DNA of 64,000 nt from Ylistrum balloti (taxonomy: Eukaryota): the NCBI RefSeq assembly GCF_031769215.1, contig NW_026782019.1, positions 558,001 through 622,000 on the forward strand. Reading direction: 5' to 3'. The position numbers were made by a program, and so were the translations under genes. How positions within the stretch are numbered: the first letter of the stretch is position 1; the number at the start of each line of letters is the position of its first letter. Below, piece by piece: positions 4,824 to 62,522 of the stretch. The notes below the pieces were generated by a model, which was not told the DNA's origin, did no database searches, and saw only the letters and a list, made by a program, of their open reading frames with translations.

Positions 4824-7685
4824 CTGAAAATGACAAAATCATAAATATTACACAGAAAAGTATAGCATTATACTTTGTAAGAATGATTACTAAATTATTG
4901 TTCTGAGTAAATTAAAATAAACTTGTGTCGAGACATTTCCATTCCAAGCAGGGTCCTTGGACATGTTGTAATAAATGTTCCCTACACAAAAATAAGCCAC
5001 ACGTACGTGAACATTAAGTACGGAATATTGTCCAGGTTATTGATCTATCGGATAACAAATTACATACATTCAACGCCGATGTTTTTTAAGGTAGAAAACA
5101 AATTACTTATTTGGTTTTGAGGTTTTGCATCAACACAACAACATGGATAACAGATTCTAAGACAATGATGAACTCAGTAGCATAACATCCTACAACGGGC
5201 TAATAGAATATCTCACTCCCTTTGTTTAAGATATGGAGCTCAATCCAATTGGGAAATGCTAGATGTTTAAATTTGCAAAGACTGGTCTGGAGGAGTTTTT
5301 ACTAAATGATGTTTTTGAAAAAAAAAACAAGAACCATTTATCTTCTGTGGGTTATGTAAGCGATCTCCATCCACATGGTAAGATTACTAAGTAGCAGAAA
5401 CTCGGCAAGACTCATTATAACCAATACAATAATATCTTTCTCCTATGGGAGTGAAAGTTTCTACTGAACTCCATATCTTCAAAACCTTTTACTTATGCTA
5501 AATGAAGCAAAGTAAATAGTTTCATAAGGAATAGAGAAAAAAATAATTTTGCCGTCATCTCCGATTCATGTAAATTGTTATCACTTTGCTCAATGAATGC
5601 TTAACCATACCTTTTATGTAAGTAATCATATTCACCACCTGATACCGATTCCCCATTTGTACCATCATGGCTGGTATAAAATAGGAATGAAACCATTTAC
5701 TTATCTTTTAATTCTGCCTTAAAAGGACACGATTAGAAGAAAACCTTTCATCTTAAGACGCAGGAAATCTGAATAGAGTGTAAGCCTTTCATCTTCAGAT
5801 TCGTACTTATATTACTGAACAATCTCTTCTGCACCATCGCATCAATTATTAACACAAGATAGTGAGTGTGAAGTATTATGTTTGGATTCAATAGTATGAC
5901 AGCACCTGTGTTCAGCCTCGTGCAAAAACAGTAACCATTCAAGACGTAGTTAAAGTTCAGTGTATTCTTTGACAAAATATAGAAGAATATATCTGGTTTC
6001 ACCGAGTTTTCTGCGATACAAAATTAAAAGCATTAACAGAATGCCGAAATGACTTTACCGTATGAATTTTCTCTCTTTTTATCGAAAATGCTAGTTATTT
6101 ATCAGTTAATAAAAGGACGTTCGAATGATAATTTTTATAACAATTTTGTCGACAGAAAGATGCTTATTTAGGATCACTACGATTTTGAACGTAAGTATTT
6201 TTTGCGATATCATCATTCCTTGATCGGTTTGGGGAATATATTTTTGATAGAGGCAACGTGTCTCCTCGACAGTTTATTGGAATTGTTATGATGGGTTGCA
6301 ACAATTTTATGTATTGCCAATCATTTAATAAGAGAAACATGTAAAAAAATAAAAATAACATCATCGTCAGTGCTTTGTTATATTTATGTTCTTAGAATGG
6401 TGATATTGAACTTGACTGTGTAAAGACAATTATTTCATCATGGAAGATGTTTGCGCTGCACATGCTTCCTGGATTTTGGGTAGACATCTTTTACCTACGA
6501 GACGTTATACACAAAAGACTCTCAATGTGTTGTTTAACATGTGTTAATTATGAAAGAATCAGATAACATTAAATAATATGTGATAAGTTAGGAATACAAT
6601 TTTATAGATATTATAGCACTGTTTTTGTAGAAATGAAAAAAATGAGCGAAATTTCACATTTATTTCAAAAAAAGAAAAGTAAATGGTTTGAATACAGGCC
6701 ATGAACATCAGTGAATATTGATATCTTGCGGTATTTTTCCTTTTACACAATTATGTAATTATTTACCCTTGACATGTTGGCACGCGATGTAATAAAGAAG
6801 GTCGATCGATAAGAAAATAGTATAATGCTTGCTATATAAACTGATAGTTAAAACTTAATTAAGTGTCCGGCTGTCCTACAGATTTCATCGTGTTGGTCGT
6901 TTATTCCCGACAACATGTAATAGAATAACGCTTTGTACGTCTAAATACTCATTTCCGTATCACATGAATACAGATTCTCTCTGCCCACGTGTCTGGGGTA
7001 ATGGTAATGCTAAAATAACAAAGTAATCCATCAGGATTATAGATTCGTATAACCGGTCGGCCTTTCCCTATTTTTGTATGCTAAGTATACATTTCAAATC
7101 AACTTTGCACTCTGTATACCGGGGACTCCTTAATGGCGCGCGCCTGTCTCATTAAGCTTTTCCAGTATGCAAGACAGGTAGGCGCCATTTTGAATTGCCA
7201 GTTCCGGAGGCTAAAAATAAATGTTAGTAGCGTGCTGTCTGGAAAGTTTAAATTAAGAGTAAATTAAGCAGTGCCATTGAAGGAAGTGCTAACATGGAAC
7301 ATCGGGAAAAAACAAATAGCCGCTCTGATATCAGATATATCAGACCTGTGATGTCATTGTTTGCTTTTTTCTAATTATTACTGATTTCATTAGTGAGTAA
7401 ATGATATATCAGTTTTCAATAAGCGACAATTACAATAAACATATCGTTAAATTTGCGATAACCATATCAGAGCATTTCACAGTGTACCGAAAATTAAAAC
7501 GTCTAACATCTTACACGTGACTCGATATAGGATATGAAGAATTTTTTTTACGGTTTTCCAGTAACAAGCATACTATTTTAGCTGTAGCAAGCGTTTATCA
7601 TGCCCAATGATTTGTTGTGTTGGTTCTGATGCTGTTTAATGCTGTTGCTACCGCTGAGGTGGTTACATAAGTGAAATATACTTAC

Positions 7686-9447
7686 TAAATCTGTCGACGA
7701 ACTTTTCTATGCACAACGAATACATGGCACAGGACAGAGAGTACAGAGACATCCCGAACGATCCTAATCGGACCCCCGCTTCATAAAGTTCATGCTTCAC
7801 GCTTCCTACTGGAGCCAAGGGGTCGCCCTCGAATATCGCCTGACCGACAAAGTCTGTGAAGTACAAAGAATAGCAAACCAAGGACATCCAACAGAACAAG
7901 TTAGTCAGACACAAGATGGCAATAGATCGAGGCATGTGGATGATAGACAACAGGTAAGTTTTTAACGTCACTTCCGTCGAGTATGTTACAATATTGTCAA
8001 CTGTCGATTCGGTGATTGCACTAACATTTGCTTTGTCTTTTTCAAGACCAGTATCATCAGAAGATTTTCGGGCTCCACCATTTTGAACCATTAATCCTTC
8101 ATCCAATGAATATTTCCGAGAAGACTTTTTATCGATTGATTGTTTCAATATTTCCCTCGCTTCGTCTTCATTCGTATTATTTCGGCTTTTCCCGAAACTA
8201 CTTCCTGGCTTGCTATCGTCGAATGGCATTTTTCCTTTTCCAGATTTGTTTTCTGTTTTAGCGGCCTCGCCGTTTTCTCGACTGTTAGAAGATCTTATTC
8301 CGGAACTTGAGTGATCAATTACACCTTTTATCGAACTACTTCCGGCTTTAGTTTCATCCAAAGTACCATAGCTTGCAGACATTGTTTGTTTGAGATTCTT
8401 ACTATTTCCTCGAAGCTCGTCTTCCGATTCAGAGGAAGATGTTTCCTCATTCACAAATTTCTTGTATTTTGATTTTCCTTTCTTTTTCTTTTTTCTTTGC
8501 ATTTGTTCCGCCCTACCTCCTCGTAACTCGTCAAGAGGCACCTCCTTAAAACTAGTAACAGTGACTAATACACAGAATACATACGCAATAAGCACCACAG
8601 TGAATACTACTCTCGTGTGACCTCCAAATGATTTCCCGAAATTTGTTTTATTCCAATCTATTCCGCCCATTATGTATCCCACGGAACCTCCAAGACCTGC
8701 CAAAACCGTGAAGGATGTAAGCCCTGCAGAGTGGTCTTCCGCAATACTAATATCCAGTAAGTAGGCCCTACAAGGAGACTGGGCGGCATCACTACTGAAA
8801 TCTAGTAATGCTACACCAAATATTGTTAAAATGATTCCGGACACGTGGTTATCTGGAATTTTGGGAATGTGCCATTCCGAACTTGTAAAATTTCCGAGTT
8901 GCTCTGTTTCCATTTTGTCTAGATTTGTATCGTTATCAGCGTCATTTAAACTGGAATTCAGCGACGTTTTGTTTGTATGATGTGTACCATAGTCTCCGAT
9001 GTATTCACCCAAAGTCTCTCCGTTCGGAACTAATATCAACCCGATGATTATTCCAGCTGATAGTAACAGAATGAAGGGTCTCCGCCGTCCATACTGTAGT
9101 CGACAACGGTCACTCATGGATCCAAGGAGCGGAACAAGAATGAATCCCATCAGAGGACTGACACACCACACAAGTGTCATCAGAGATATAGGGACTCCTA
9201 GTTTGAGTAAGATAGGGCTGACGAAAGCTGTTTCAGCGGCGTAGCACAATTCTATACCACAAACAGCTGCACTAAGTCGCATCAGTTGCCATCTTGATTT
9301 TTTCGTCGCGAGATGCTTGTAATTTGTGTCGCTTCCTGCGTCCATCAAAGTAGTCAACCCCTCGCCAAAGGATATGACGTAAGGTTGTGCCTGATCTGTG
9401 ACTCTTTTGAGGACCTGGATGGTCGAGGTAAGAAGTCCAATCGACAT
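7686..9447 (-). CDS. SLC45: SLC45-family (MATP / proton-associated sugar transporter, lovit-like) MFS transporter, first coding exon. Full CDS join(9447..7686,4823..4648,4031..3816) = 717 aa
   Basis: ATG at 9447 in AAAATG context, 10 nt after an acceptor ttttcag at 9458. Donor TTTA|gtaagt at 7685. Motifs LSAAVCGIELCYAAETAFVSP, GSMSDRCRLQYGRRRPFI, LDFSSDAAQSPCRAYLLD and CWMSLVCYSLYFTDFVGQAIFEGDP are characteristic of SLC45/sucrose-transporter-like proteins. Subfamily (A1-A4) cannot be assigned by eye. Confidence 0.93.
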
Positions 9448-9554
9448 TTTTGCAGATCTGAAAATCATACAGAAAAACATCGAAATAAATAAATTGATGC
9501 ATATAAAAAAACAACAGGGGATATGTCTTAATTTTGGTTGCTAGCCGGCACATA

Positions 9555-11786: not shown

Positions 11787-13454
11787 ATTGTCAGAACTCT
11801 ATTACATATGCTATGCGCAAAGCATTATGGAATTTGAAGACTAAATATAACTGCCTAATTTGCATGTTTTGTAATCAGTCCGTTATGTTCGATCAGAATA
11901 GGGTTACATTTATGAATTATGTAATTTGACATTTTTCGAAACTCAGAGAAATATACTGATCAGTTTTTGGATACAAACTTTGATTTGTATTATGTTTAAT
12001 TCCATCAGAAAATGAACATTTTCTTTAACGGTGACCACCTTAAAAGGAATCGAAATATATATTAGCTTTGTCATGCTATATTTACAATGATAAATGCTTG
12101 GTATCGTTATGATATGACGGGAGGTAAATCAAGTATGTTCACATGATATCAACTATACATGGTCGATGTATTCAAAAGCCTAAGTACGGTCTTACCAGTT
12201 ACAATATTCCCTTGTGTTTTAACAACAGTCCGAATTCATAAGAGAAAATGGAGAGAGAAAAAAATAATAATAAAAAAAAACCAATTTCATCTTGTTTCTG
12301 TCTGGGTTTTATATTAGAACGATCAAATGAAAGATGACACAGTTTTCAATTATTTATAACCTCTATTTGGGTTTCAAATTTACGTTAAGATCTAAAAACC
12401 CCGGAGTAAGCAGTTTACTGAATATAAAAGTACACCATTCCAGTTCAAACTTTCCAAACCTCATCGAGAAATTTAATCTAGAAATAGATGTGAAAAAAAT
12501 ACATCTTAGCGGAAACCGTAGTTCTGCAGCAGAACCCAACCATACGAGTTAGCAACTGACATTTCAAATTGTTTGGTTGCTGCTCTTACGAGCACGAACA
12601 TTACCATATTTAGTTATTCAACGATCGTGCAGACCAGACATAACAATATATTTTTGGAAACTCGAGTCGAGCTCTTTATAGAAAATGATTTCTTTCTTCG
12701 TCAAAACTTCTTAAATTATTCATCAACAAACGTGGGTGATTTCTACATCAAACTTGGGGAAATGTTGGTTCCAAGTGCACAGGAAGTTTTTGATGATGAG
12801 TCAAAAATACATTCCAAGGCTAACAGGAAATCATTATACAAAATCGCTTGCTATAGCCGATAAGCACGTGTCAGCACTCGATAAACGGAACTGCGAGGTG
12901 TGGTAAAGACACATGATATCGGCAAATAGACACATTAACGATGACATGTAAAATAACAAGTTCATTAAACACTGCGAAGGGTGTCCTTTCAAACTTACCG
13001 CTTTATGCAATGTTTCTGCAATCTTGTGGTTTTCACCAAGTGACTAATATCAAATTAATTTGGTATCGATAGTGCAAAAGACGGAAATCAATTCCCAAAT
13101 TATTGTCACAAGAAAACAGTCACTGTCCGCCATAATCAGTAAAAGCGTTACAAATGACCATGTGACCAATCTATATTTCATATCAATATCTCAAATTGGA
13201 AAAATGGAGACGAATGCTAACTCGGTCAGTTTACATCTTATTACCGTTTTCGTATAAATCTTTATACGGCTAATGGGTTTTGCGACATTGACGGATACAA
13301 CTTCCTAGAAACTGTGATGTATAGTGATTGCGTTTGTCAATGGACTTCACAACTGTGCTTGGCTAAAAATAGTTAGTTGATTATCACATGATGATAACGT
13401 GGTAAAGCGTAATTAATATCTAGGAAAACAGGTAAGCATATCTGTTGAGACTAG

Positions 13455-15997
13455 AAGGACGTGGAGTCTATCCAGTACAGGTAAACTCATTTACTATAAG
13501 ACGTGGTGTCTATTCAGTACAGGTATACTCATTTACTAGGACACGTCAGTGTCTATTCAGTACAGTTATACTTATTTACTAGGACACGTCAGTGTCTATT
13601 CAGTACAGGTGTACTCATTTACTAGAAGACGTAGTGTCAATTCAGTACAGGTGTACTAATTTACTAGAAGACGTAGTGTCTATTCAGTACAGGTATACTC
13701 ATTTACTAGGACACGTCAGTGTCTATTCAGTACAGGTGTACTCATTTACTAGAAGACGTGGTGTCTATTCAGGACAGGTATTCTCATTTACTAGGACACG
13801 TCAGTGTCTATTCAGTACAGGTATACTCATTTACTAGGACACGTCAGTGTCTATTCAGTACAGGTATACTCATTTACTAGGACACGTCAGTGTCTATTCA
13901 GTACAGGTATACTCATTTACTAGGACACGTCAGTGTCTATTCAGTACAGTTATACTTATTTACTAGGACACGTCAGTGTCTATTCAGTACAGGTATACTC
14001 ATTTACTAGAAGACGTAGTGTCAATTCAGTACAGCTATACTCATTTACTAGGACACGTCAGTGTCTATTCAGTACAGGTATACTCATTTACTAGGACACG
14101 TCAGTGTCTATTCAGTACAGGTGTACTCATTTACTAGGACACGTCAGTGTCTATTCAGTACAGGTGTACTCATTTACTAGAAGACGTAGTGTCTATTCAG
14201 TACAGGTGTACTCATTTACTAGAAGACGTAGTGTCTATTCAGTACAGGTGTACTCATTTACTAGAAGACGTGATGTCTATTCAGTACAGGTATACTCATT
14301 TACTAGAAGACGTAGTGTCTATTCAGTACAGGTATACTCATTTACTAGGACACGTCAGTGTCTATTCAGTACAGGTGTACTCATTTACTAGAAGACGAAG
14401 TGTCTATTCAGTACAGGTATACTCATTTACTAGAAGACGTAATGTCTATTCAGTACATGTATACTCATTTACTAGAAGACGAAGAGTCTATTCAGTACAG
14501 GTATACTCATTTACTAGTGACAGTACAGTGTCTATTCAGTACAGGTGTACTCATTTACTAGAAGACGTGATGTCTATTCAGTACATGTATACTCATTTAC
14601 TAGAAGACGTGATGTCTATTCAGTACATGTATACTCATTTACTAGAAGACGTAGTGTCTATTCAGTACAGGTGTACTCATTTACTGGAACACGTCAGTGC
14701 TTATTCTGTACAGGTGTACTCATTTACTAGGACACGTCAGTGTCTATTCAGTACAGGTATACTCATTTACTAGAAGACGTAGTGTCTATTCAGTACAGGT
14801 ATACTCATTTACCAGGACACGTCAGTGTCTATTCAGTACAGGTATACTCATTTACTAGGACACGTCAGTGTCTATTCAGTACAGGTGTACTCATTTTCTA
14901 GAAGACGTGGTGTCTATTCAGTACAGGTATACTCATTTACTAGGACACGTCAGTGTCTATTCAGTGCAGGGATACTCATTTACTAGGACACGTCAGTGTC
15001 TATTCAGTACAGGTGTACTCATTTACTAGAAGACGTGGTGTCTATTCAGTACAGGTATACTCATTTACCAGGACACGTCAGTGTCTATTCAGTACAGGTA
15101 TACTCATTTACTAGGACACGTCAGTGTCTATTCAGTACAGGTGTACTCATTTTCTAGAAGACGTGGTGTCTATTCAGTACAGGTATACTCATTTACTAGG
15201 ACACGTCAGTGTCTATTCAGTGCAGGGATACTCATTTACTAGGACACGTCAGTGTCTATTCAGTACAGGTGTACTCATTTACTAGGACACGTCAGTGTCT
15301 ATTCAGTACAGGTGTACTCATTTACTAGAAGACGTAGTGTCTATTCAGTACAGGTGTACTCATTTACTAGAAGACGTGATATCTATTCAGTACAGGTATA
15401 CTCATTTACTAGAAGACGTAGTGTCTATTCAGTACAGGTATACTCATTTACTAGGACACGTCAGTGTCTATTCAGTACAGGTGTACTCATTTACTAGAAG
15501 ACGAAGTGTCTATTCAGTACATGTATACTCATTTACTAGAAGACGTGATGTCTATTCAGTACATGTATACTCATTTACTAGGACACGTCAGTGTCTATTC
15601 AGTACAGGTATACTCACTTACTAGAAGACGTAGTGTCTATTCAGTACAGGTGTACTCATTTACTAGAAGACGTGATGTCTATTCAGTACATGTATACTCA
15701 TTTACTAGAAGACGTGATGTCTATTCAGTACATGTATACTCATTTACTAGAAGACGTAGTGTCTATTCAGTACAGGTGTACTCATTTACTGGAACACGTC
15801 AGTGCTTATTCTGTACAGGTGTACTCATTTACTAGGACACGTCAGTGTCTATTCAGTACAGGTATACTCATTTACTAGAAGACGTACTGTCTATTCAGTA
15901 CAGGTATACTCATTTACTAGAAGACGTACTGTCTATTCAGTACATTTATACTCATTTACTAGGACACGTCAGTATCTATTCAGTACAGGTTTACTCA
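13455..15997. repeat. Minisatellite array, mixed 42/43-nt units, ~59 copies
   Basis: Units GACACGTCAGTGTCTATTCAGTACAGGT(A/G)TACTCATTTACTAG (43 nt) and AAGACGTAGTGTCTATTCAGTACAGGT(A/G)TACTCATTTACTAG (42 nt). The overlapping SIQYRYTHLL ORFs are artefacts. Confidence 0.97.
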
Positions 15998-17439: not shown

Positions 17440-19510
17440 CATCACCATTATTTCTGTCTGTAAATAATCTGTCTTCATACCATACCATTATTTAGCTCTG
17501 TTGTCATACACTGCTGTCGTCCCCACATCACCGCCATCTCTACTATTTCACACTTCCTATCGTCCGCACATGAAGAACACACCTCTTATCTTGTCCCCAT
17601 ATCACCGCCATCTCTACTATTTCACACTTCCTATCATCCGCACATTAAGAACACATCTCTCATCTTGTCCCCACGTTACCACATTCTCTCTTTACAATCT
17701 CACGCTGCCTGTCAACCCAATCCCCACCCTCCCCTTACCACCATGTCCATTAGGTAACACTGTCAATCGTCCCCACATTACCACATTCTCACTTTACTCT
17801 CTCACGCTGCCTGTCGGCCTCATATCACTACTTCTCACTTTTACCTCACAATACCTGTCAACTTAAATAACGACTATCTTTTTTCTATTATTTCACACTT
17901 CCTATCTTCAATACATTACCACCATCTCACTCTATCCTCTTAAGCTTCCTGTCGTCCTCACATAACGATTAGGTCTCTGTATTATATAACGGTTGCTGCC
18001 ATCCCAACATTGCAACCGTCTCCTTCTATCAACTCACAATTCCTGTTAGCCATTATACCACCATCTCTCTTTATTATCTCACGCTGCCTGTCGTCTCCAC
18101 ATTACCACCATCTCTCTTTATTATCTCACGCTGCCTGTTGGCCCCACATTACCACCATCTCTCTTTATCATCTCCCGCTGCCTGTCATCCCTACATTACC
18201 ACCATCTCTCTTTATCATCTCACGCTGCCTGTCATCCCCACATTACCACCATCTCTCTTTATTATCTCACGCTGCCTGTCGTCTCCACATTACCACCAAC
18301 TCTCTTTATTATCTCACGCTGCCTGTCATCCCCACATTACCACCATCTCTCTTTATCATCTCACGCTGCCTGTCATCCCCACATTACCACCAACTCTCTT
18401 TATTATCTCACGCTGCCTGTCATCCCCACATTACCACCATCTCTCTTTATCATCTCCCGCTGCCTGTCATCCCCACATTACCACCATCTCTCTTTATCAT
18501 CTCACGCTGCCCGTCATCCCCACATTACCACCATCTCTCTTTATCATCTCCCGCTGCCTGTCGTCTCCACATTATCACCAACTCTCTTTATTATCTCACG
18601 CTGCCTGTCATCCCCACATTACCACCATCTCTCTTTATCATCTCCCGCTGCCTGTCATCCCTACATTACCACCATCTCTCTTTATCATCTCCCGCTGCCT
18701 GTCGTCTCCACATTACCACCATCTCTCTTTATCATCTCCCGCTGCCTGTCATCCCCACATTACCACCATCTCTCTTTATCATCTCACGCTGCCCGTCATC
18801 CCCACATTACCACCATCTCTCTTTATCATCTCCCGCTGCCTGTCGTCTCCACATTATCACCAACTCTCTTTATTATCTCACGCTGCCTGTTGGCCCCACA
18901 TTACCACCATCTCTCTTTATTATCTCACGCTGCCTGTCATACCCACATTACCACCATCTCTCTTTATCATCTCACGCTGCCTGTCATCCCCACATTACCA
19001 CCATCTCTCTTTATTATCTCACGCTGCCTGTCATCCCCACATTACCACCATCTCTCTTTATCATCTCACGCTGCCCGTCATCCCCACATTACCACCATCT
19101 CTCTTTATCATCTCCCGCTGCCTGTCGTCTCCACATTATCACCAACTCTCTTTATTATCTCATGCTGTCTGTCATCCCCACATTACCACCATCTCTCTTT
19201 ATTATCTCACGCTGCCTGTCGTTCCCACATTACCATTGTTTCCCTGTACAATTATCTCACAATTCCTGCTCTTCTCTTTACCACTATATCTCTCTTTATC
19301 ATATTACAACTCCTGTTGTCCCTGATTACCACCATCTTACAATTCCCTGTCGTCCCCGCATTACCACTATCTCTCTTTACTATCTAACACTTCCTGTTAT
19401 CCCCACATTACCACTATCTCTCTTTACTATCTAATACTTCTTGTCATCCCCACATTACCACTATCTCTCTTTACTATCTAATACTTCCTGTCATCCCCAC
19501 ATCACCACCA
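17440..19510. repeat. Minisatellite array, 47-nt unit; homogeneous core ~18040-19235 with degenerate flanks
   Basis: Unit CATCTCTCTTTATCATCTCACGCTGCCTGTCATCCCCACATTACCAC. The plus strand is strongly C/T-rich and G-poor. Confidence 0.95.
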
Positions 19511-22500
19511 CCACTCTCTATCGTCCTCATCCCCTCCCTTCCCATCTCCTGTTAGCTCTTTCTTTCTACAGTCCTAATACCATTTCCTCATCAGATCGAT
19601 CTAAAAATAAGCCCTTACTCAGCAATATCCTCGGGAATTAACACGGGTTTTATGGAGTTTCAATTATCTTTCCCTATTGACTTTGATATCGGCAGTCACT
19701 ATTATTTATTAAAACAGTGTTTTAATTCTTTCCTACATCATTACACATGTAATAAAAGCACAACTTCGTGACGCACCATTATAGAAACTACCAAATCGGT
19801 TTTATTTTTTTAATTGACGTCATCAAAACCGTACCTCCATCTTCAAAGAAAATATGACATACATGTCCAAGGTCATCTGTTTAGTTGGGAATTACTCTGT
19901 AATTTCTTAGTGTATTCGCATCAGAAACGAGAAAATATTCAGGACGTCGTGAGCTAGTACTTAGAACTGACGAAATCATTACCAGCATCTAAAGCTCGTT
20001 GATATTAGAAATCACCTGGACGACGCCTCCGTATCCGTCAATATTTCTGAACGAAAGAATAATTGCCATGTTATACCACAGTTGAAGTATTCTTGCTGTT
20101 CGTTAGAGTTTTTTTTCCAATAGAATAATGATACTGGTATTTATACATAAGCGTCAGTTTGCAATGAATAGTGCTTTTGGTTTTGAACGTCGGCTGTGAA
20201 TTTTTGTTTGTTTTTGTTTTTTTGTTTTTTTTGTTTGTTTGGTTTTTTTGTTTTGTTTTGTTTTATTTATTTATTTTTTTTTTACTTGAAAAAAACACGC
20301 ATACGTGTTCTAGATAATCACATATGTCCTGTGTTTTGTGAAGACAGCGATATGAAACCAGAAGAAACGTCCTTGGGTATGTATTTGACAGAAAACTTTA
20401 TAATACACTTGCTTCTGTCCTCGTTTTCACAAGAAAGCGGGACGGGGGCTTCACTTACATAGCTGAGCAAAGCGAATGATCCAGACATATAATATAATGT
20501 AATTTTAAAACAATTGACCTTAATTGTTTCACTCCATTTAATCCCGTAAACTTCTTCCATTCTCAAGATACCTACACTAACTCAAACGGAATAAAAGTGC
20601 AGGCTTCATTCAGGAAGGAGACCTTCAGCTAAGTTTGTTAAGCCTCATTTGCAATCATCACCACATTCGAGCGCCCTTAGAGGTCTGCTACAATTAATCA
20701 TGCTGTCTGTTTCAAATTACCACACTACCGTTCTAGCATTACAACCCATCGGAAACCTCAAAACTTGGTAATGATTGATGCAGTGATGAACATTCTCTCT
20801 ATACTGTTGAAAGAATAAGTATAATGATTTCTAGGTTTGTGTTCATTAATAATTCTTCAATTACTGATCAGCTTTGCTTGTTGTCTGAAGTACGCCATGA
20901 ATGACAAACGAGTATTCGCAACGAGGTGACGGAATCGAAAGCTCCTCACTCGAAGACGAATACAGCCGATAAACGGATTAACGACGCGCGCCGAAACGTA
21001 TGTTCATTTATGACAAAATAGCGCTAACCACTTAATGTAGATCAAGTCTTGGAGAGGCCTTTGGATGTACAAACTAATTTCGGTAAGGTACAATTGATTT
21101 AAATTTGAGCAAATCCCATAAAAGCAACATATTCTATATTACGTGTCTCCTCTTGGTAAGGGAAGGTCATAGCATTGCGGATGTTAGCGTAATGCGTAAC
21201 TCTTAATGTTTAAATAGGAATACCTTGTCTACATCGACAGCGGCCGAGTTGGCGGACGTGGTTGTAAAGCTGTGGTCACCCTTTCAAAATGATTTCCGGG
21301 GAAGACACTACGTCTTAGAAATGCATGGGGAAACTGACAGACTGTGTGATGATAAGGTGAACTATTTATCACGAAGTATTTTATTCCTTATATGCTGTAT
21401 GTTATTGGTCTTTTATCTGAAATTGTATTTTATACTACTTCAATGCTTTGTAATGTTCATGTACTTCGCATGATTAAAGAATCATTTCTCATTCACATAC
21501 GTTTTTATGTAAAATAAATAAATAGATAAATAAATGCTATGTTTATCGGCAGTCATTCGAACACATACTTATATGGAACATCTAAGTTACAATTAATGGT
21601 TTTAAACCATGGGCTAGAGTGTCTACAGGTTGATGTAGTCGGGTCTGATCGGGCCTTAGAGACATGGACAGAACGAGACAGGGAGGAAAGACAGGGCACT
21701 ACATCACTGATATCTACACGGTACATGAGATTAAGCAGTTTGGTTTAGAAATATTTTTTACATTTTGAGATTTTTTTTTAAATGCAAGCTTTCGAAAACG
21801 TGTTTTTCCTTCATTAAGCAAGGGTTGCAACTATTCGGAGAATGGACGAAAATGTAATCAGCTGTTAAATTGTCACGACATATCTTCGTTCCAATGACAC
21901 GCTTCTGCTGTAGACAGTCTGAGCACGTTGATGTATCATTAATTTCACCCCTTATTTGGGATCTAAATGGGATGATGAGTTTCAGATAAGCATCTTCTTG
22001 AAATCCGCGATCTGTGTGAGGATAGTGGTAAATTCCTAAAAAATGCGTGAATTGTTTTCGTGACAAAAACGATTTTTCCTGTTATGGCTGTAGACCCAGA
22101 GTCTGACTGACGCCTTTCATTATATAAAGTCATCGGAATAGGGCACAAAACAAATGGTTTTTTGTTTGTTTTTTTTTCGTATTGTGTTTCAAAGCACACA
22201 CGGCGATACTGAAGTTTGGTGATATTTTAATAGTTGAATTAGAAACAGGCGGTGTTAATGTTTTCCATGCCACTAGTTACAGGTGAAAAATGAACTGTAA
22301 GTAACTGTCAGGTATTCAAACCATGAAAATGCTAATAAGCTGGTAGCTTGATGTACTGCAACGAGTTTTAACCAATGGCGATCAAAGAGATCAACCTAAT
22401 TAACAGATATCGTCTCCTTCGTGGCAGTGCTGGGTATATGTACTGACAACAGAAAATACCGCACTGTTAAATTCTATTATATCAGATTTGGTGTTAATTT

Positions 22501-26500: not shown

Positions 26501-26906
26501 ACATTCTGTATCCCTGATTGGCCGTATGTTTTATCAGCCACAAATAGATATACAGAATAGATGTACACTATATGTAAAAGCATTTGAACAAATCTACCCT
26601 TGTGTGGTCTTCCTTGGATATTGGCATCAGATTTGAATAATAGATGTTTGATATCCTAGGTAAAGTTTGTAAAATAAAATGACTTAATTCTTTAAAATAT
26701 TGTTTTACATTCCTTTTCTCGTTATATTGACCTGTCAATGTACTTATATAGACCTATCTAGTGTTAATTCGTTATGTCATCTTTTGTTTTGTCCTTCTGC
26801 TTAATCCCTATGTTAGTTGTGTAGAATTACACAGGCACACAGGAGATATTAGCACCACCTACACAAATATAGTTACATACAGAAAGGTCAAAAAGGAGTT
26901 AAACAA

Positions 26907-27730
26907 CATCATACAGTTGTTTCGTCCTTCTAAGACTCATCAGTGATGCTACATCACACAGTTGTTTCGTCCTTCTAAGACTCATCAGTGATGATACATC
27001 ATACAGTTGTTTCGTCCTTCTAAGACTCATCAGTGATGCTACATCATACAACTGTTTCGTCCTACTAAGACTCATCAGTGATACTAAATCATCAGTGGCG
27101 CTACATCACACAGTTGTTTCGTCCTTCATCAGTGATGACTCATCAGTGATGCTACATCATACAACTGTTTCGTCCTACTAAGACTCATCAGTGATACTAA
27201 ATCATACAGTTGTTTCGTCCTTCTAGGACTCATCAGTGATGCTACATCACACAGTTGTTTCGTCCTCCTAAGACTCATCAGTGATGATACATCATACAGT
27301 TGTTTCGTCCTTCTAAGACTCATCAGTGATGCTACATTATACAGTTGTTTCGTCCTTCTAAGACTCATCAGTGATGCTGTGTCATACAACTGTTTCGTCC
27401 TTCTAGGACTTATCAGTGATGCTACATCATACAACTGTTCGTCCTTCTAGGACTCATCAGTGATGCTACATCATACAGTTGTTTCGTCCTTCTAAGACTC
27501 ATCAGTGATGCTACATCATACAACTGTTTCGTCCTACTAAGACTTATCAGTGATGCTACATCATACAGTTGTTTCGTCCTTCTAGGACTCATCAGTGATG
27601 CTACATCATACAACTGTTTCGTCCTTCTAGGACTCATCAGTGATGCTACATCATACAGTTGTTTCGTCCTTCTAGGACTCATCAGTGATGCTACATCATA
27701 CAACTGTTTTGTCCTTCTAGGACTCATCAG
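26907..27730 (-). ncRNA. Tandem array of 18 ~45-nt minimal hammerhead ribozyme units
   Basis: Minus-strand unit is UGAUG-UAG-CAUCA-CUGAUGA-GUC(C/U)-UAGAA-GGAC-GAAAC-(AACU|AGUU)-GUA. It contains the full catalytic core, a 4-bp stem II, a 5-bp stem I and a GUA cleavage triplet in the correct order. Activity is not demonstrated. Confidence 0.88.
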
Positions 27731-28949
27731 TTATTTTAATTGTCTAAATCATCAAATGTAGGAGGCGACCGAGAGGAAATATAAAATGATCGGAACAAAA
27801 GTCATAACCTACAATGGGAGTTAATGAATAAAGCCTCAGAATTCAACAAAGCTACATGTCGTTTTTACTTAAATAGGCTAGATAGCGACTAAAAAAACAG
27901 CGACTGAAAATAAACAGCGACTGAAAATAAACAGCGAAAATAAACATAAATATCAAAATAATAAACAAGAATTACTTGTGTCTAGTTCAACGGTACCTCA
28001 GGTACTGAATCAAGAGCTAGGTGACGTACGTAAAGTGCGGTACATGAATATAAAGTACCGTCAGCTTAACAAGTTTTGAACCCTGCTTGTTCAATAGTGA
28101 TAACAATATGATATATATGCGATTCCTGTTACGTTATTCCCAAGGTACACTGTTTGAAATTTCTATTATATTTCAATTTAATATATCTTTTTTAGCTATA
28201 AGTATGTTATAGCACATGATAAAGTTAACAGAGTATGCATTATATTTTCTGAAAATGGTTAATTTTGACCTATAAAAATTTTAAAAAAGGTTATTTGGCT
28301 ATGTCTTTTCTCACATATTAAGCCACGTATCGATACTAGTGTTTCCTTATACAGAACAATATCGTCATATCTAGTTTTGCTATTAACAGGTCAAAGAAAT
28401 AATCATTATTTCAACAAATAAGTAAAAAAATAGTTAAAAAACCAAAATTGTAAAAAATATTTATCATAATCCTAGGCTAACAATGCACTGCTTACCCGGG
28501 CGAATGTCAATTCATAATTTATACGTTCCTACTATAGCACGTAAATCTCCCAATCTTTTCTACTTTGATCATGAGACAGGAAAACAAGCACGTGATGTTC
28601 AGATATGTAACATACTATACAATATTGATAATCAATATATGTACATGTGTATTAAATAAACACACGCGTATTAACCATGTGTAATTCTATCATCGTACAC
28701 GGGGAAAAATCTAGATCAGTAGCGATACAATAGTTTCACGATATTTATGTTTGATAAGGATTGCGACAGGGAATTGCGGTATTGTAAATAACCTTGTCTT
28801 TACATTAAAGCAATATTTGTTTAGATACGTTGCAGTTATGGGGAAAATCATTAAAGAAAATACCGACAAGTAGACTGAATCTTAATTCAAACCTATACTG
28901 GAGGGGGAAAGACGACAGAATACTCTTTTTTAAGAAGAAAAGAAAAATA

Positions 28950-42050: not shown

Positions 42051-43449
42051 CATTTAAAAAAAAAAGACCAGGTGACTGATGCAGCCAATTCAACATGCAG
42101 GTTTTTGAATCTACGAAACCCCGGAGACTATATTTCAACATTTATATACATTTTAACAAGCTTTATTGCGCAATATGTTCTAAGTAGACTAGTAGATTAG
42201 ATTTACTGAACCAAATTGATCCGACCTCCAATGTACACTAGTCGGGCTTGGGATATTGTTAATTTCCCCTTTTCCTGCCCAAATTAAAGTAGAAAAATGC
42301 TTTCTGTTTCTCTGTAAATACGAATCATTGTGGAAAACAATGTTGTTATAATAAGTTTGACGATAAGCTATATACATTGTATAATATATTTGTCATTGAT
42401 ACGAGTTGCTTCCCTTCATTTGTCTTTGCTGTTGAAGAAGATGTGTTATTTGCACACTTTGCCCCAATAGGGTACTATGGCATCTAAACAGTCAAAACTA
42501 CTTTTATATGAAAATTACGAAATCAATTGAATTATCGGGTTAATGTATCTCTTCGAGATAGCAGATGGTAGACACTGCTAGTGGACTTTCAGTCCCCGAG
42601 GTCTACCGTAACCTGTATGCTACGTCCAGAATGAACACACGTACTTAGTGTTCTGTGACATTATCAATTATATCAATTCATTGAATTATGGATTAGTGCA
42701 CCTCCTCTGCTACATTTTGACATTTCTTTCGAGATATTCAAATTAAGGTCCTTAGCATTACTTATTAATATCAAAAACAACTGTATTTGGCTCTACTACA
42801 TCTTATTCTGAAATAGTAATTTTTTGTAACCTATCATCAGATAAAAACGAATTTCTATTCTGTTATATTTTTTTATATAGTTTTGATAATTAATTTGTAG
42901 TAATTTGAAAATCTCTGGGTTCATGATTAACTCTTTCACATATTTTCTGACCAACTGTTTTATTGTCAAATAACGGCATAATTTTCGCAATAGCCTTGCC
43001 ATTGTGTAGTGTGTACTGATTCATATAGATCACATTTATGTGTGTCCTTGAACTATGTTATGACGATGATCTACTTCAAAAGATTGTGCAAAGACACAGA
43101 AATGAATAGTACTTTTTCATCATTTTAGAGCAAGATAGAGATAGTGAAGAGCCAAACAATGAATTAAACCGCATCAGCTGTTTTGTCCTTCTAGTGATGC
43201 TAAGGGCCTAAAATTTGAAACTAAGGAGGAGACTAAGGGAAATCCAAAGTGATAAGAAAAAGCTAAGATTTGGACGAGGAGATGCAGCAGCATTTTTGTG
43301 AAAAGTATTTGAAATTATCCTTAAAATGACACTCCGGTTGTGGTTTTATTTCTTTAGTAATGAAAAATCACTTCTGGCCTTTCCCACTGGCACAGATTTC
43401 GTGTATTGTAAATGCTCGAAAATCAAACATATAGAATCCAGGAACCTAC

Positions 43450-47571: not shown

Positions 47572-48699
47572 CTATTTTTTACAAAGCAATGCCATGCGAA
47601 ATTCTTTTATAAGCCATACATAAAGGATGGGGTTTATGACTGGATGTAGCAGTGGCAAAATTGATAAAATACCCTCTGCTGCACGTGCCTCAGAAACACC
47701 AATAAGTATTAATATTCGAACAACGGAGAGAGGAACAAAGGAGACAAACAAACATAACTGGACCAATGTCACAGTTTTCAGTGCATCACTGAGTTTGCGA
47801 ATATTACATGTTTCTTTTCTGAGAATTTTTGTTTCCCTAGCTGAAGGTATTCCATCAGCTGATGATCTTGTGGTTGTGGTCACTCTGACCGAGAAAACCC
47901 TTACAGGGGGCACAACGCGTGTTCTGTTAAGGTGATTCTCGTAACTATGGTAACCAGCAGATGTGTTTTCATGAGAGCACGATTCTTCGCGAAACTTTGT
48001 GTTTACTGTAGTTGTTGTTAGACCTTCTCCATTGACGTTTTCATTGTCATCCGAGCCTCGCATTACAGATTCGTTGTTTGTGAAACTTACTTGCTTCATT
48101 CGTTTTTGCAACCGATATGCAGCGACGGCGTATAAAACGAGTGTAAGAAACACTAGCGGAATGAAAAGCACCTGTGTACCCAAACTTAATCCGAAATAGT
48201 TCGCATTGTTATACATAAAAGCGACAACACAACCAATGAATGAACCTGTTATTGGAAAAGAAATTACAAGACCCACAGAGTATATTGAAAGGATAAGCCA
48301 AGCTGATAATAAGACTGCATACTTTTTGAGACCTTGAAATGCCCGGATATACGTAGATGACGCGCTGATAGCAAGAACTCTTTCAAGTGAAATAATAAAT
48401 GCTTGAAGTAAAGACGTTCCGAAGCAAACAACACTTGCTGTGTACGTGAATAAGCAAAATCCTTTGCTATACATTTTCAAATTGAATCGAGCGCTGATGA
48501 TGAGGATTACGATGAAAGAGGACAAAAAGTCACTGCAGCTGAGACTTAGTGTAAAGATAACATGGGGTCGTTGCCGGAGAAGCGGTCTGGTAAAAAGAAG
48601 GACTACAACCACACCATTCTCTATCAACCCAATCGTTGACAACATTAATACGACGTACGTCCCGATACCAATGGCTGATCCTGTCCTTGACGTGACATT
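47572..48699 (-). CDS. Orphan class A (rhodopsin-like) GPCR 1, main coding exon. Predicted CDS join(54943..54920,48699..47572) = 383 aa
   Basis: Seven hydrophobic segments with TM1 GLIEN, TM2 LSCSDFL, TM3 ISLERVLAI, Cys residues at the top of TM3 and in ECL2, and TM7 HPVINPILYVW. Acceptor tttttttcag|AAT at 48700, phase 0. The ORF-track start MIFIGIFVFFQ is intronic polypyrimidine sequence. Confidence 0.9.
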   Translation of the reverse strand, partial: NVTSRTGSAIGIGTYVVLMLSTIGLIENGVVVVLLFTRPLLRQRPHVIFTLSLSCSDFLSSFIVILIISARFNLKMYSKGFCLFTYTASVVCFGTSLLQAFIISLERVLAISASSTYIRAFQGLKKYAVLLSAWLILSIYSVGLVISFPITGSFIGCVVAFMYNNANYFGLSLGTQVLFIPLVFLTLVLYAVAAYRLQKRMKQVSFTNNESVMRGSDDNENVNGEGLTTTTVNTKFREESCSHENTSAGYHSYENHLNRTRVVPPVRVFSVRVTTTTRSSADGIPSARETKILRKETCNIRKLSDALKTVTLVQLCLFVSFVPLSVVRILILIGVSEARAAEGILSILPLLHPVINPILYVWLIKEFRMALLCKK

Positions 48700-49866
48700 C
48701 TGAAAAAAGACAAAAATGCCGATAAATATCAAGTGAACTTAATATAATGTAAAAAAATAAATATTGACTGAAAACGATATGCAAGATCTGAAAAGGATGG
48801 CGAGAAGTATCAAGAATTGCAGGAGTTGCAAGATATTTTTGATCAAATGAAAACAAAATACAACAGTTACAGACAAGAAAACATTAATGAGAGAAATCCG
48901 TGGGCGATTCTGATTGACTTGCCAGTACTTCTTACTGACTCCAGTCGGTCAAAGAACAGAGAGGAAAGTGAACATTTGATTTTGTCATGGATTGCTGGTA
49001 AAGGGCTAACAAACAAACCTGGAGAAAAAAGTGTACCTTGTATGTCACCTTTCGTAAAATGTTAACAAAGGAGACAGACAATTATGTAATGAAAGCTTGC
49101 CATGACCAAGAATATCAAATAATGTCGAATGAAATAGAAAGATACAATAAAAATCAAAACTCTTTGACAGTAATGTTTAAACTTCTAGGATAATAAGACT
49201 CATATAAGTTAATAGACCAAATCCTATGATATGAATATAAGGCAATGTTGTCTAATACACTCCAATGAAGGAAGATTACATAGATATAGATAGAAAGTTT
49301 TGGTTTGTAACACTAAAAACGGTATTTGTACGAAGGTAATAGTTCGTGTTCTAAGTTTAACGTTGGAAGTTGAACAATCAAGAATATTGCTAGACCAGAC
49401 AGACTGAAATTCATTCCACTCTCAAACGTCCATGCTATACTTTGTAACGAGTCAGGTATCTATAAAAATTTGTATTTTCGTTGTCGAGGTATATTTAAAT
49501 TTCTCGAATTTGACTAATGTAAAACAGTTGTGTAATCTCTGTATATACATAAGATTTGCTTTCAAGAAGCTTAAGACGGTATTATCAGCTGGCTCTGGTG
49601 TGCTAATGCGAATATACATGTGTGTTTTTGTTCAATTTTCACAGATCTGTACAATGACATATCTCTGCTTATCTTGTCAATAGGCAATGTAGTTTCTGTC
49701 ATACAGGAAACAGAAATTGAATTGTCATTGACATACAAAACTTCATTTCCTAACATCAAGTGAAGTTTGACAAGACGATGAGCAGACCACCATGACCAGA
49801 CCAGAACTTCTTTACAGTGTTCAAAACATCAAATGGACAGACAAAATGAAGAAACATCCGTTAAAC

Positions 49867-61439: not shown

Positions 61440-62522
61440 TTAAGATAATAACTCCTTTCTCAATCCTTTAATCCGCCAGACATATAGAAGTGGATTAACT
61501 AAAGGATGTGCCATAATTAATAATCTTGTAGTTAACTCTAATACCGGTAAATGAATGTGTGCCAACTTTAACATCTGTATAACCATGTGTGGGATAAAGG
61601 TGAAGAACAATACTACCAGAATAATGAGAACTGTGGTTAAAGCAGTCTTCAGTTTGTCTGTCCGCTTAGAACATCGGACTCCGTGTTTGAAGATTGCGCC
61701 GAGCATTAATGGTGGTTGAGTCTGTGGATTATCATGAAATGGAGTTTTAGGTTGAACGTCGTTTTTAAAATGTGACGAGAGTGGTTTAAGACTTGGGGGT
61801 TTGAATTTTAATCTTAAATGTGTGTAATTACTGGGAATGGCGTCTAACTTGGCTATAAGAGGATTTCTCTCATAAGCATCGCGTTGATGTTTCCTAAGTA
61901 ATCGTGTCAGTGTACAAACAGCCGTAGAATACAGTAGAATGGTTAATATCACTAAAGGTAGAACAATGATGAGCTGAGTCAAAACAAGGATGATCAGCAT
62001 GTTAACATAAGAATACATCCTTTCAAGTTTACAACGGTTATAATTTCCGGTAGTGTTAAAACTGCTGATAATGATCACAACGTAACAGATCAGAAGAACA
62101 GTCGATATAAACGGGGTGTAATATTTTGATTTCCCGGCAAAAATGGAATGAGTTCGACATTTCACAGCGTTGAATCTCTCTAGAGATATCAGGAAGCAGA
62201 GGAACAGGGAACTCCCAAAGAATGCCACCCATCCGGTATAGATCATTTCACAAAATGATTTCGACGGAATTAATTTGGTGTATATCGGTATGTAATACAC
62301 AAGGTTAGTACTACAAACAAGCAAATCACTGAAGCTCAGGCAAAGGATGAAAAACTCATGAGCACGTTTCCTCAGCTTCGGTCTTAAAATTAAAAGAATA
62401 ACCACAACGATGTTCTCGATGAAGCCAATTATCTGCATACATAAACCAACAGCTTCCGGAATGGGATAGGTTACTGCGTCTTCTATATGATACTCTGTTT
62501 GGTTCCATGGCGTCTGTGGTTT
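61440..62522 (-). CDS. Orphan class A GPCR 2, main coding exon. Predicted CDS join(63077..63075,62522..61440) = 361 aa
   Basis: TM1 GFIEN, TM2 LSFSDLL, TM3 ISLERFNAV and TM7 HPLVNPLLYVW. The frame stays open 28 codons upstream of the ORF-track ATG (KPQTPWNQTEYHIEDAVTYPIPEAVGLC, with an NQT sequon), back to acceptor ttacag|AAA at 62523. Confidence 0.9.
   Translation of the reverse strand, partial: KPQTPWNQTEYHIEDAVTYPIPEAVGLCMQIIGFIENIVVVILLILRPKLRKRAHEFFILCLSFSDLLVCSTNLVYYIPIYTKLIPSKSFCEMIYTGWVAFFGSSLFLCFLISLERFNAVKCRTHSIFAGKSKYYTPFISTVLLICYVVIIISSFNTTGNYNRCKLERMYSYVNMLIILVLTQLIIVLPLVILTILLYSTAVCTLTRLLRKHQRDAYERNPLIAKLDAIPSNYTHLRLKFKPPSLKPLSSHFKNDVQPKTPFHDNPQTQPPLMLGAIFKHGVRCSKRTDKLKTALTTVLIILVVLFFTFIPHMVIQMLKLAHIHLPVLELTTRLLIMAHPLVNPLLYVWRIKGLRKELLS

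What the first reader, a model, noticed from the sequence alone, without database searches (positions are those of the whole stretch)
26907..27730. Minisatellite built entirely of 45-nt minimal hammerhead ribozymes
Seen: the minus strand of every unit carries CUGAUGA, stem II GUC(C/U)-UAGAA-GGAC, GAAAC, a GUA triplet and stem I UGAUG-UAG-CAUCA. Example 27662->27610: 5'-ACAACUGUA^UGAUG UAG CAUCA CUGAUGA GUCC UAGAA GGAC GAA ACAGUUGU-3'. The unit contains essentially nothing except the ribozyme. Established: minimal hammerheads that cleave as dimers are associated with Penelope-like retroelements, and tandem hammerhead 'retrozymes' in animals give circular RNAs, but with units typically several-fold longer. 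Inference: a transcript of this array would self-process into ~45/90-nt RNAs, making it a near-minimal catalytic satellite or selfish replicon, possibly mobilised by the Penelope-like RTs whose remnants are abundant in this window.
Basis: partly seen in the sequence, partly recalled or inferred. Interest (0 to 1): 0.92.

Follow-up and report, generated by a model that had tools for sequence, protein, structure and literature searches.

The report
Spacer-less hammerhead ribozyme minisatellite
This 0.8-kb repeat really is about 17 back-to-back copies of a 45-base self-cutting hammerhead RNA motif, but it is one partly dead copy of a common ~400-base mobile repeat whose single ribozyme was multiplied as DNA, not a tiny self-replicating RNA.

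Summary
Window 26906-27731, minus strand, holds 17 recognisable 45-nt units plus two fragments, and each unit is a hammerhead ribozyme (HHR). One unit passes Rfam's type III threshold (51.6 bits; cut-off 48.5). By sequence, 6 units are intact, 4 have weakened helices and 7 are dead.

- **Carrier element.** The array sits inside a dispersed non-coding element found at roughly 700-900 or more loci. It has a ~330-nt 5' arm, a ~95-nt 3' arm and a ~38-nt terminal direct repeat. Two further copies in this window carry a single decayed HHR.
- **Ribozyme type.** The family unit is a canonical animal type I "dimer-acting" HHR with a palindromic helix III (ACAGCUGU). The spacer between ribozymes has shrunk to a 3-nt loop.
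- **DNA-level growth.** A two-unit block containing a dead unit is duplicated here. Core-killing mutations are homogenised in sister arrays. Core and non-core positions decay equally.
- **Helix III alternation.** The alternating complementary variants are a local 90-bp repeat, not a family feature.

No Penelope-like remnant was detected in the window with the queries available, and no RNA data exist. The scan has met this family repeatedly on other DNA of this genome. A 2026 preprint already reports retrozyme units down to 51 bp. I class this as a new variant of a known kind.

The parts
26906..27731 (-). Tandem array of 17 recognisable 45-nt hammerhead units plus two broken fragments (27101-27168)
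27609..27662 (-). Best unit: a complete hammerhead with an 8-bp helix III. Predicted cut between 27654 and 27653.
   Evidence: RF00008 scores 51.6 bits, above the gathering score. Unit table.
27654..27707 (-). Intact unit. Predicted cut between 27699 and 27698.
27564..27617 (-). Intact unit. Predicted cut between 27609 and 27608.
27474..27527 (-). Intact unit.
27160..27213 (-). Intact unit by the criteria used (helix I 4/5 bp).
27002..27055 (-). Intact unit.
27429..27707 (-). Local 90-bp higher-order repeat. Helix III strands alternate ACAGUUGU / ACAACUGU six times, giving perfect 8-bp helices between neighbouring units.
   Evidence: The two variants are single transitions of the family palindrome ACAGCUGU. 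Adjacent T-A or A-T pairs number 11 in the sample, 8 of them in this array.
27205..27311 (-). Two-unit block (UAU loop unit followed by a dead GUG-site unit) that recurs at 26912-27018.
   Evidence: The two blocks differ at 2 of 107 positions and share 4 derived states at which both differ from the reference dimer.
26912..27018 (-). Second copy of the duplicated two-unit block.
27732..27870 (-). Remnant of the 5' arm of the carrier element, ending ...CCUCUCGGUCGCCUCCUACAUUUGAUGAUUUAGAC and running into the first, partial unit. The upper limit is approximate.
   Evidence: MAFFT alignment with sister loci. BLAST to the L038 arm covers 27682-27800 at 75.6%. Alignment score 57 against a shuffle maximum of 23.
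26812..26905 (-). 3' arm of the carrier element. It starts UGAUGUUGUUUAACUCC and is diverged.
   Evidence: Alignment score 38 against a shuffle maximum of 22.
43080..43330 (-). Another copy of the same element, with one internally deleted hammerhead between the 5' and 3' arms.
42500..42800 (+). Another old copy of the same element, with one heavily decayed hammerhead.

Best explanation
The array is the expanded ribozyme module of one old copy of a dispersed, non-coding, retrozyme-like element.

**The element.** It has a ~38-nt terminal direct repeat, a ~290-nt remainder of the 5' arm, a hammerhead, ~55 nt of 3' arm, and the same ~38-nt repeat again. This amounts to slightly more than one turn of a ~400-470-nt unit.

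**The original ribozyme.** It is a canonical animal type I hammerhead with a 6-bp open helix I, a 4-bp helix II with loop UAGAA, and a helix III of only 2 bp capped by the palindromic AGCU. Alone it is inert and it needs a second copy to build helix III.

**What the duplication did.** Tandem duplication of a 45-bp segment put partner ribozymes side by side. Each 8-nt palindrome then serves as the 3' strand of one helix III and the 5' strand of the next, and helix I is closed by a UAG triloop. This is why Rfam reads the units as type III.

**Array dynamics.** Arrays have grown and shrunk to between 3 and more than 60 units by slippage or unequal exchange of DNA, regardless of catalytic competence. 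The copies now drift neutrally.

**Steps that are inferred, not shown.** In the active source elements the ribozyme was needed to process the element's RNA, by excision of unit-length RNA and perhaps circularisation, before reverse transcription by an RT supplied in trans. A minus-strand transcript of 27474-27707 would still cut itself after GUA.
For: **Hammerhead identity.**. The fold of a trimer has z = -4.7 against shuffles, with the central unit in the HHR junction.

**Abundance.** The family consensus 35-mer occurs 2216 times in the 648-Mb genome, against 0 for the reversed control. Arrays lie on many contigs.

**Type I reading.** In palindromic sister arrays both RF00008 (up to 50.5 bits) and RF00163, the type I model (up to 37.5 bits; gathering score 34), pass threshold.

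**Shared arms.** 33 of 40 arrays have the 5' arm and 35 of 37 the 3' arm. The terminal direct repeat is seen at both ends, and one locus has a whole 3' arm in front of the 5' arm (L052). The 5' arm is itself a repeat with 704 candidate places at 68-71% identity. Single-HHR copies lie in the window.

**DNA-level growth.**
- A duplicated block includes a dead unit.
- Array-wide fixation of core-killing changes occurs in sister arrays, for example G5A, G8A and A9U.
- Core and free positions vary equally (0.046 against 0.067, p=0.62).
- Most helix changes break pairs (1023 broken, 572 kept).

**Constraint in the source lineages.**
- Units are 6.7% from their consensus while the adjoining 3' arm is 18% from its consensus in the same 22 loci (paired Wilcoxon p=1.4e-6).
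- The best cross-locus identities are 93-95% for arrays and about 70% for arms.
- The commonest variants sit at positions a hammerhead tolerates: N7, loop 1, loop 2 and the centre of helix III.

**Literature.** Animal type I HHRs with a 1-2-bp helix III and a palindromic loop act as dimers in tandem repeats (PMC4209133). Non-LTR retrozymes are such repeats (PMC7229834). Retrozyme units as short as 51 bp have been reported, together with local amplification by unequal crossover (bioRxiv 10.64898/2026.07.22.740005).
Against: - No RNA data exist, so neither transcription nor cleavage is shown.
- No autonomous partner was found. Sixteen loci with GIY-YIG hits, including intact PLEs, share neither arms nor this ribozyme, and the PLE hammerhead found is of another design.
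- Target-site duplications and exact ends could not be defined, because the arms are about 30% diverged.
- The loci sampled were the top-scoring ones, which favours well-kept arrays. A genome-wide bound from the exact-match count only says that units are at most about 11% from consensus.
- No significant depletion of array-fixed changes was detected at core positions (10 of 43, p=0.26). The case for selection therefore rests on the arm-versus-unit contrast.
Confidence: 0.68

Rival explanations
1. Ultra-minimal RNA replicon or retrozyme. 45- or 90-nt self-cleaved RNAs are circularised and copied by rolling-circle reverse transcription, and the arrays are the cDNA concatemers.
For: The unit is nothing but a ribozyme. 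Units are much better conserved than the arms. The six-fold alternation of complementary helix III strands would be the natural product of a 90-nt circle. Retrozymes are thought to spread in this way (PMC7229834).
Against: Arrays almost always sit between the same arms, and in the same orientation relative to them. Single-unit copies of the carrier exist. Arrays contain partial units, blocks whose spacing is not a whole number of units (113 and 158 bp) and duplicated dead units. Catalytically dead variants are homogenised over whole arrays. The alternation is confined to this array: outside it there are 3 T-A and 0 A-T neighbours against 20 A-A. A cleaved 45-mer carries only one helix III strand and cannot re-form the ribozyme on its own.
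Confidence: 0.07
2. The carrier is a DNA-level mobile element (MITE- or Helitron/Helentron-like), of the kind that carries internal tandem repeats in bivalves. The hammerhead is passive cargo that happens to form the repeat.
For: From my own knowledge, not tested here: bivalve genomes are rich in non-autonomous elements with a central minisatellite between conserved left and right arms. A small hairpin (GGACUUUUAGUCC) lies in the 5' arm. Array growth is clearly a DNA process.
Against: The ends are direct repeats, not inverted ones. One copy shows the 3' arm running straight into the 5' arm, as in a circular or tandem template. Missing 5' arms (7 of 40) outnumber missing 3' arms (2 of 37), as expected for 5'-truncated retrocopies, although the difference is not significant. 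Every eukaryotic hammerhead family described in the papers read is tied to retroelements. The ribozyme is far better conserved than the arms.
Confidence: 0.13
3. The array has a host function at this locus, for example a transcript-destabilising or RNA-processing cassette.
For: Six units are still intact. The fold is much more stable than shuffles.
Against: It is one of hundreds of similar arrays. It is intergenic as far as ORFs show: the nearest large ORFs are 7TM receptors at 47.5 and 61.4 kb and an MFS transporter at 7.7-9.5 kb. Seven of 17 units are dead. Decay is neutral across core and non-core positions.
Confidence: 0.03

Closest known systems
Animal non-LTR retrozymes (Cervera & de la Pena 2020, PMC7229834; Li, Clavereau & Pollet 2026, bioRxiv 10.64898/2026.07.22.740005)
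   Same: Head-to-tail DNA repeats, each carrying a type I hammerhead with a short palindromic helix III that needs a neighbour. They are AT-rich, non-coding, dispersed in many copies, and variable in repeat number from dimers to dozens. The carrier element (~400-470 nt, terminally redundant) fits the usual monomer size.
   Different: Here the repeated unit is the 45-nt ribozyme alone, with a 3-nt 'spacer'. This is below the 150-450 nt of the 2020 paper and below the 51-bp minimum of the 2026 preprint. Neighbours share helix III strands, and the array is nested inside a larger element rather than being the element. No circular or linear RNA has been shown.
Minimal hammerheads of Penelope-like elements (Cervera & de la Pena 2014, PMC4209133)
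   Same: Dimer logic through a palindromic helix III region, association with retroelements, and very high copy numbers in invertebrate genomes.
   Different: PLE min-HHRs have a 6-8-bp helix II with an unpaired base before it and a short helix I. This genome's own PLE shows exactly that design. The 45-nt family has a 4-bp helix II, no bulge and a 5-6-bp helix I. No RT/GIY-YIG ORF adjoins the arrays examined.
Classical hammerhead satellites (newt satellite 2, Schistosoma Sm-alpha, cave-cricket pDo500), as cited in PMC7229834
   Same: Satellite-like tandem DNA whose transcripts carry a type I hammerhead per unit.
   Different: Their units are a few hundred bp with a long non-ribozyme part. This comparison rests on my own knowledge and on the citing paper; I ran no sequence comparison.
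Plant LTR retrozymes and viroid-type type III hammerheads (PMC4918200)
   Same: Rfam's type III model gives the best score, and helices I and II are both closed by loops.
   Different: The type III appearance is a by-product of head-to-tail type I units. No LTR/PBS/PPT organisation is apparent in the arms and flanks read, and the host is an animal.

Membership tests
Hammerhead ribozyme (Rfam clan CL00010: RF00008 / RF00163) | Conserved core C3-U4-G5-A6-N7-G8-A9 and G12-A13-A14, the A15.1-U16.1 pair, and a cleavage-site base that is not G | tested here: met
   Ten of 17 units keep every core base and a GUA site: 6 fully intact and 4 with weakened helices only. The other 7 are dead: 5 by core or cleavage-site changes (G8A twice, G17 twice, loss of A15.1), 1 by a rearrangement that removes its upstream helix III strand and cut site, and the partial edge unit.
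Hammerhead ribozyme (Rfam clan CL00010: RF00008 / RF00163) | Three helices around the core, and a score at or above the curated threshold | tested here: met
   RF00008 scores 51.6 bits against 48.5 for one unit, and 17 more hits fall below threshold. Helix counts are, and the minimum-free-energy fold. In sister arrays both RF00008 and RF00163 pass their thresholds.
Hammerhead ribozyme (Rfam clan CL00010: RF00008 / RF00163) | Site-specific self-cleavage | not testable with these tools
   This needs in vitro transcription or end-mapped RNA. No RNA run was offered.
Animal non-LTR retrozyme | Tandem DNA repeats with one type I hammerhead per unit | tested here: met
   45-bp period. The type I reading is CAUCA-core-helix II-GAA-AC[AGCU]GU-A^UGAUG. 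RF00163 reaches 37.5 bits in sister arrays but only 24.8 bits in this array, whose palindrome is mutated.
Animal non-LTR retrozyme | Unit length within the described range (150-450 nt; 51-972 bp in the 2026 preprint) | tested here: not met
   The unit is 45 bp. The carrier element of ~400-470 nt would fit.
Animal non-LTR retrozyme | Expressed as unit-length linear and circular RNAs | not testable with these tools
   The only public run holding the stretch is not on record as RNA.
Animal non-LTR retrozyme | Dispersed multicopy family with more-than-unit-length copies and terminal redundancy | tested here: met
   Dispersal. A ~38-nt direct repeat lies at both ends of the carrier, and there is one 3'-arm-to-5'-arm junction. 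Target-site duplications are unresolved.
Penelope-like element pseudo-LTR hammerhead | min-HHR design: long helix II with an unpaired base, and a short helix I | tested here: not met
   The family has a 4-bp helix II and no bulge. A PLE of the same genome has the min-HHR design.
Penelope-like element pseudo-LTR hammerhead | Lies in the repeat that flanks an RT + GIY-YIG ORF | tested here: not met
   There is no RT ORF near the array, and no tblastn hit of the RT-element ORFs (two of them confirmed PLEs) in the window. The arms and the ribozyme are absent from 16 GIY-YIG loci, apart from one unrelated nearby copy. Only a few PLE families were sampled.
Bivalve MITE/Helentron-type elements with internal tandem repeats | Terminal inverted repeats or Helitron-type ends | tested here: inconclusive
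   The ends seen are direct repeats.

The most novel reading that the evidence does not exclude
Placing two or more dimer-dependent hammerheads back to back may be an adaptive design, not just slippage. A built-in partner would let a single-copy insertion process its own RNA without a multimeric transcript. The released 45/90-nt pieces, with 5'-OH and cyclic-phosphate ends, could be ligated into the smallest natural ribozyme circles and occasionally re-copied into DNA. That would make this the lower size limit of the retrozyme life style.
Probability: 0.07. Interest if true: 0.85.

Novelty: new variant of a known kind. Interest (0 to 1): 0.42.

Why it matters
It shows how far a ribozyme-bearing repeat can be compressed: a unit with no spacer, in which every 8-nt palindrome is used by two neighbouring ribozymes. 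It also offers a natural series of about 800 arrays (a rough estimate) for studying how dimer-dependent hammerheads behave in cis.

For genome annotation, it explains a common 45-bp minisatellite of this bivalve genome as the expanded ribozyme module of a retrozyme-like element. It cautions against reading such arrays as type III hammerheads or as independent RNA replicons.

It does not open a new class of system. The nearest published cases are non-LTR retrozymes, with units down to 51 bp in a 2026 preprint.

Tried and rejected
1. **RNA evidence.** The look-up of sequencing runs returned one run that is not on record as RNA. I did not use read laying, because it turns away stretches with long repeats and contigs could not show expression.
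2. **Autonomous partner.** Among the GIY-YIG loci, two ORFs were confirmed as intact PLEs (RT plus C-terminal GIY-YIG). None of the loci shared the arms or this ribozyme. Rfam found no hammerhead in them. A hand scan found a classic min-HHR in one, of a different design.
3. **tRNA or other small-RNA head in the arms (SINE idea).** ARAGORN and Rfam found nothing but hammerheads.
4. **The same ribozyme elsewhere.** An exact 33-nt junction pattern had no match in metagenome contigs. A 25-nt core pattern hit one phage-like contig with unrelated flanks, probably by chance.
5. **Structural three-unit pattern for any spacer-less hammerhead array.** The 120+ metagenome hits and 17 viral hits were, in the 137 loci examined, coding Glu/Lys-rich repeats with periods that are multiples of 3. 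None had a helix II consistent with a ribozyme.
6. **Selection on the catalytic core within arrays.** No significant signal was found.
7. **Compensatory change as a family feature.** Double compensatory pairs show only a mild excess (48 against 33 +/- 5.6 in shuffles), driven largely by this array's own alternation.
8. **Fuzzy-regex tiling of units.** This first under-counted units and later timed out. I replaced it with Hamming-distance tiling and BLAST.
9. **RVT_1 search of the whole genome.** It listed only the 150 best places, none in the window, so it was uninformative.

Full report
**Observation.** The minus strand of 26906-27731 is a 45-bp tandem repeat. Every unit reads helix I UGAUG/UAG/CAUCA, core CUGAUGA, helix II GUCY/UAGAA/GGAC, GAA, then an 8-nt segment and an A. 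Rfam's type III hammerhead model scores 51.6 bits at 27611-27661, above its 48.5-bit gathering score, with E=1.8e-8 for the whole window. Seventeen more hammerhead hits below threshold tile the array.

Scoring each unit against the established requirements (core bases, A15.1-U16.1, G10.1-C11.1, cleavage base not G, helices) gives the following:
- 6 intact units;
- 3 units with helix III at 6/8 bp;
- 1 unit with helix I at 3/5 bp;
- 7 dead units: G8A twice, G17 twice, loss of A15.1, one rearranged unit and the partial edge unit.

A three-unit transcript folds far better than shuffles (z = -4.7), with the central unit in the hammerhead three-way junction. The opposite strand folds as well but lacks the core.

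**The family.** The genome (648.5 Mb, 1372 contigs; earlier scan notes call it a scallop, which I did not test) holds this unit on many contigs. The 35-nt consensus from the core to the cut site occurs 2216 times, against 0 for the reversed control. With about 6% divergence per site, this suggests on the order of 20,000 units in about 800 arrays. That is a rough inference.

I tiled 1013 units from 44 distinct arrays. The family unit has CUGACGA (N7 = C) and a perfectly palindromic 8-nt segment, ACAGCUGU. Read from one ribozyme's point of view, this is CAUCA-core-helix II-GAA-AC[AGCU]GU-A^UGAUG. That is a type I hammerhead with a 2-bp helix III capped by a palindromic tetraloop, the design described for animal hammerheads that work only as dimers in tandem repeats (PMC4209133). 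In palindromic sister arrays both the type III and the type I Rfam models pass their thresholds. The type III look is therefore a consequence of joining type I units head to tail with only UAG between them.

**The alternation.** In this array the palindrome has mutated to ACAGUUGU ('T') and ACAACUGU ('A'), in the order TATATA.TAAAAT|TAAA. T next to A restores a perfect 8-bp helix, T-T gives two G-U pairs, and A-A gives two mismatches. Across the other 43 arrays A lies next to P or to A (48 and 20 cases) and next to T only 3 times. The alternation is therefore a local 90-bp higher-order repeat, one event amplified three times. It is not a designed heterodimer.

**The carrier.** The sequences on either side of the arrays are homologous between loci. 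A 3' arm of ~95 nt is present in 35 of 37 arrays with a visible end, and a 5' arm in 33 of 40, this array's arms included. The 5' arm is itself a dispersed repeat, with 704 candidate places at 68-71% identity over ~320 nt. The element begins and ends with the same ~38 nt (…AAAGGTGCTATTCACTTGTGTGTCTTTTGTACAATCTT), as searches show. At one locus a whole 3' arm runs directly into the 5' arm (L052), as expected if copies are slightly more than one turn of a circular or tandem ~400-470-nt template.

The window holds two more copies of this element with a single, decayed hammerhead, at 43080-43330(-) and 42500-42800(+). This agrees with earlier scan notes of a ~397-nt terminally redundant hammerhead repeat in this genome. 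The array boundaries fall inside helix I: the 5' arm ends …UUAG-CAUCA and the 3' arm starts UGAUG-CAG…. The ancestral single ribozyme therefore had an open 6-bp helix I leading into the arms.

**How the arrays grow.** A two-unit block containing a dead GUG-site unit occurs twice in this array. The two copies differ at 2 of 107 positions and share 4 derived states at which both differ from the reference dimer. Partial units shift the register by 23 bp. In sister arrays, catalytically lethal changes (G5A, U4A+G8A, G8A, A9U/A) have spread through whole arrays. Among units, core positions vary as much as free positions (0.046 against 0.067, p=0.62), array-fixed changes are not depleted in the core (10 of 43, p=0.26), and most helix changes break pairs (1023 against 572). 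This is DNA-level duplication and neutral decay.

**Was the ribozyme ever needed?** In the same 22 loci, units are 6.7% from their consensus and the adjoining arm 18% from its own (p=1.4e-6). The best cross-locus matches are 93-95% for arrays but about 70% for arms. The commonest variants lie at N7, in loops 1 and 2, and at the centre of helix III. I read this as constraint on the ribozyme in the lineages that produced new copies. One caveat is that my loci were top-scoring ones. A bias-free bound, together with the rough candidate count, only says that units are at most about 11% diverged.

**Partner and mechanism.** The genome has intact Penelope-like elements: an RT + GIY-YIG ORF of 755 aa, in 5.36-kb tandem copies. 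None of 16 loci with GIY-YIG hits shares the arms or this ribozyme. One PLE carries a classic min-HHR of a different design. tblastn with the ORFs of these RT-bearing elements finds nothing in the window. The arms contain no tRNA or other known RNA. Retrotransposition in trans is therefore inferred from the terminal redundancy, from the non-significant excess of missing 5' arms, and from the literature. It has not been shown.

**Comparison with what is known.** Non-LTR retrozymes are the closest class, with 150-450-nt units in PMC7229834. The 2026 preprint by Li et al. reports consensus lengths from 51 to 972 bp and proposes local amplification by unequal crossover. A 45-bp unit with shared helix III strands, nested in a larger element, is a more extreme variant than anything I found described. 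I found no paper on hammerheads in scallops.

**Verdict.** The hammerhead array is real, and the layout is neat and apparently undescribed. Mechanistically, however, it is an expansion of a known kind of element. It is largely decayed at this locus, has no expression data, and has already been met many times elsewhere in this genome by this scan.

Noticed in passing
window 43080-43330 (-) and 42500-42800 (+): Two further old copies of the carrier element, each with a single decayed hammerhead. One has an internal deletion of GACGAGUC and of the cut site.
   Followed up: partly
L073 = G000:C422:242000-251999 (tandem copies also at 240-262 kb): An intact canonical Penelope-like element. ORF1 is 485 aa with no Pfam hit. 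[quoted passage not shown] The element is repeated head to tail every 5.36 kb. Neither Rfam nor my pattern scan found a hammerhead in it.
   Followed up: partly
L076:6060-6115 (G000:C30, about 570 nt after an RT+GIY-YIG ORF): A classic PLE minimal hammerhead: CUGAGGA-U-GGCAUAC-CUA-GUGUGCC-GAAA-CUAG. It has a 7-bp helix II, a bulged U and a palindromic CUAG, and is clearly different from the 45-nt family.
   Followed up: no
L077:5652-5676 (IMGVR_UViG_3300025151_000045): A phage-like contig has one hammerhead-like site identical over 25 nt (core, helix II GUCC/GGAC, loop UAGAA) to the scallop family. The flanks are unrelated, so this is probably convergence on the common helix II.
   Followed up: partly
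window 13450-15997, 17770-19521, 57675-60132: Three other long minisatellites with 42-, 47- and 44-bp periods (38 to 60 copies). None matches an Rfam family at gathering score.
   Followed up: no
window 27884-27937: A 17-bp minisatellite (AGCGACTGAAAATAAAC, 3.3 copies) lies in or just upstream of the 5' arm of this copy.
   Followed up: no
window 47572-48732 (-), 61440-62438 (-), 7663-9480 (-): Two intronless rhodopsin-family 7TM receptor ORFs and an ORF with an MFS transporter domain are the only sizeable coding features in the window.
   Followed up: no
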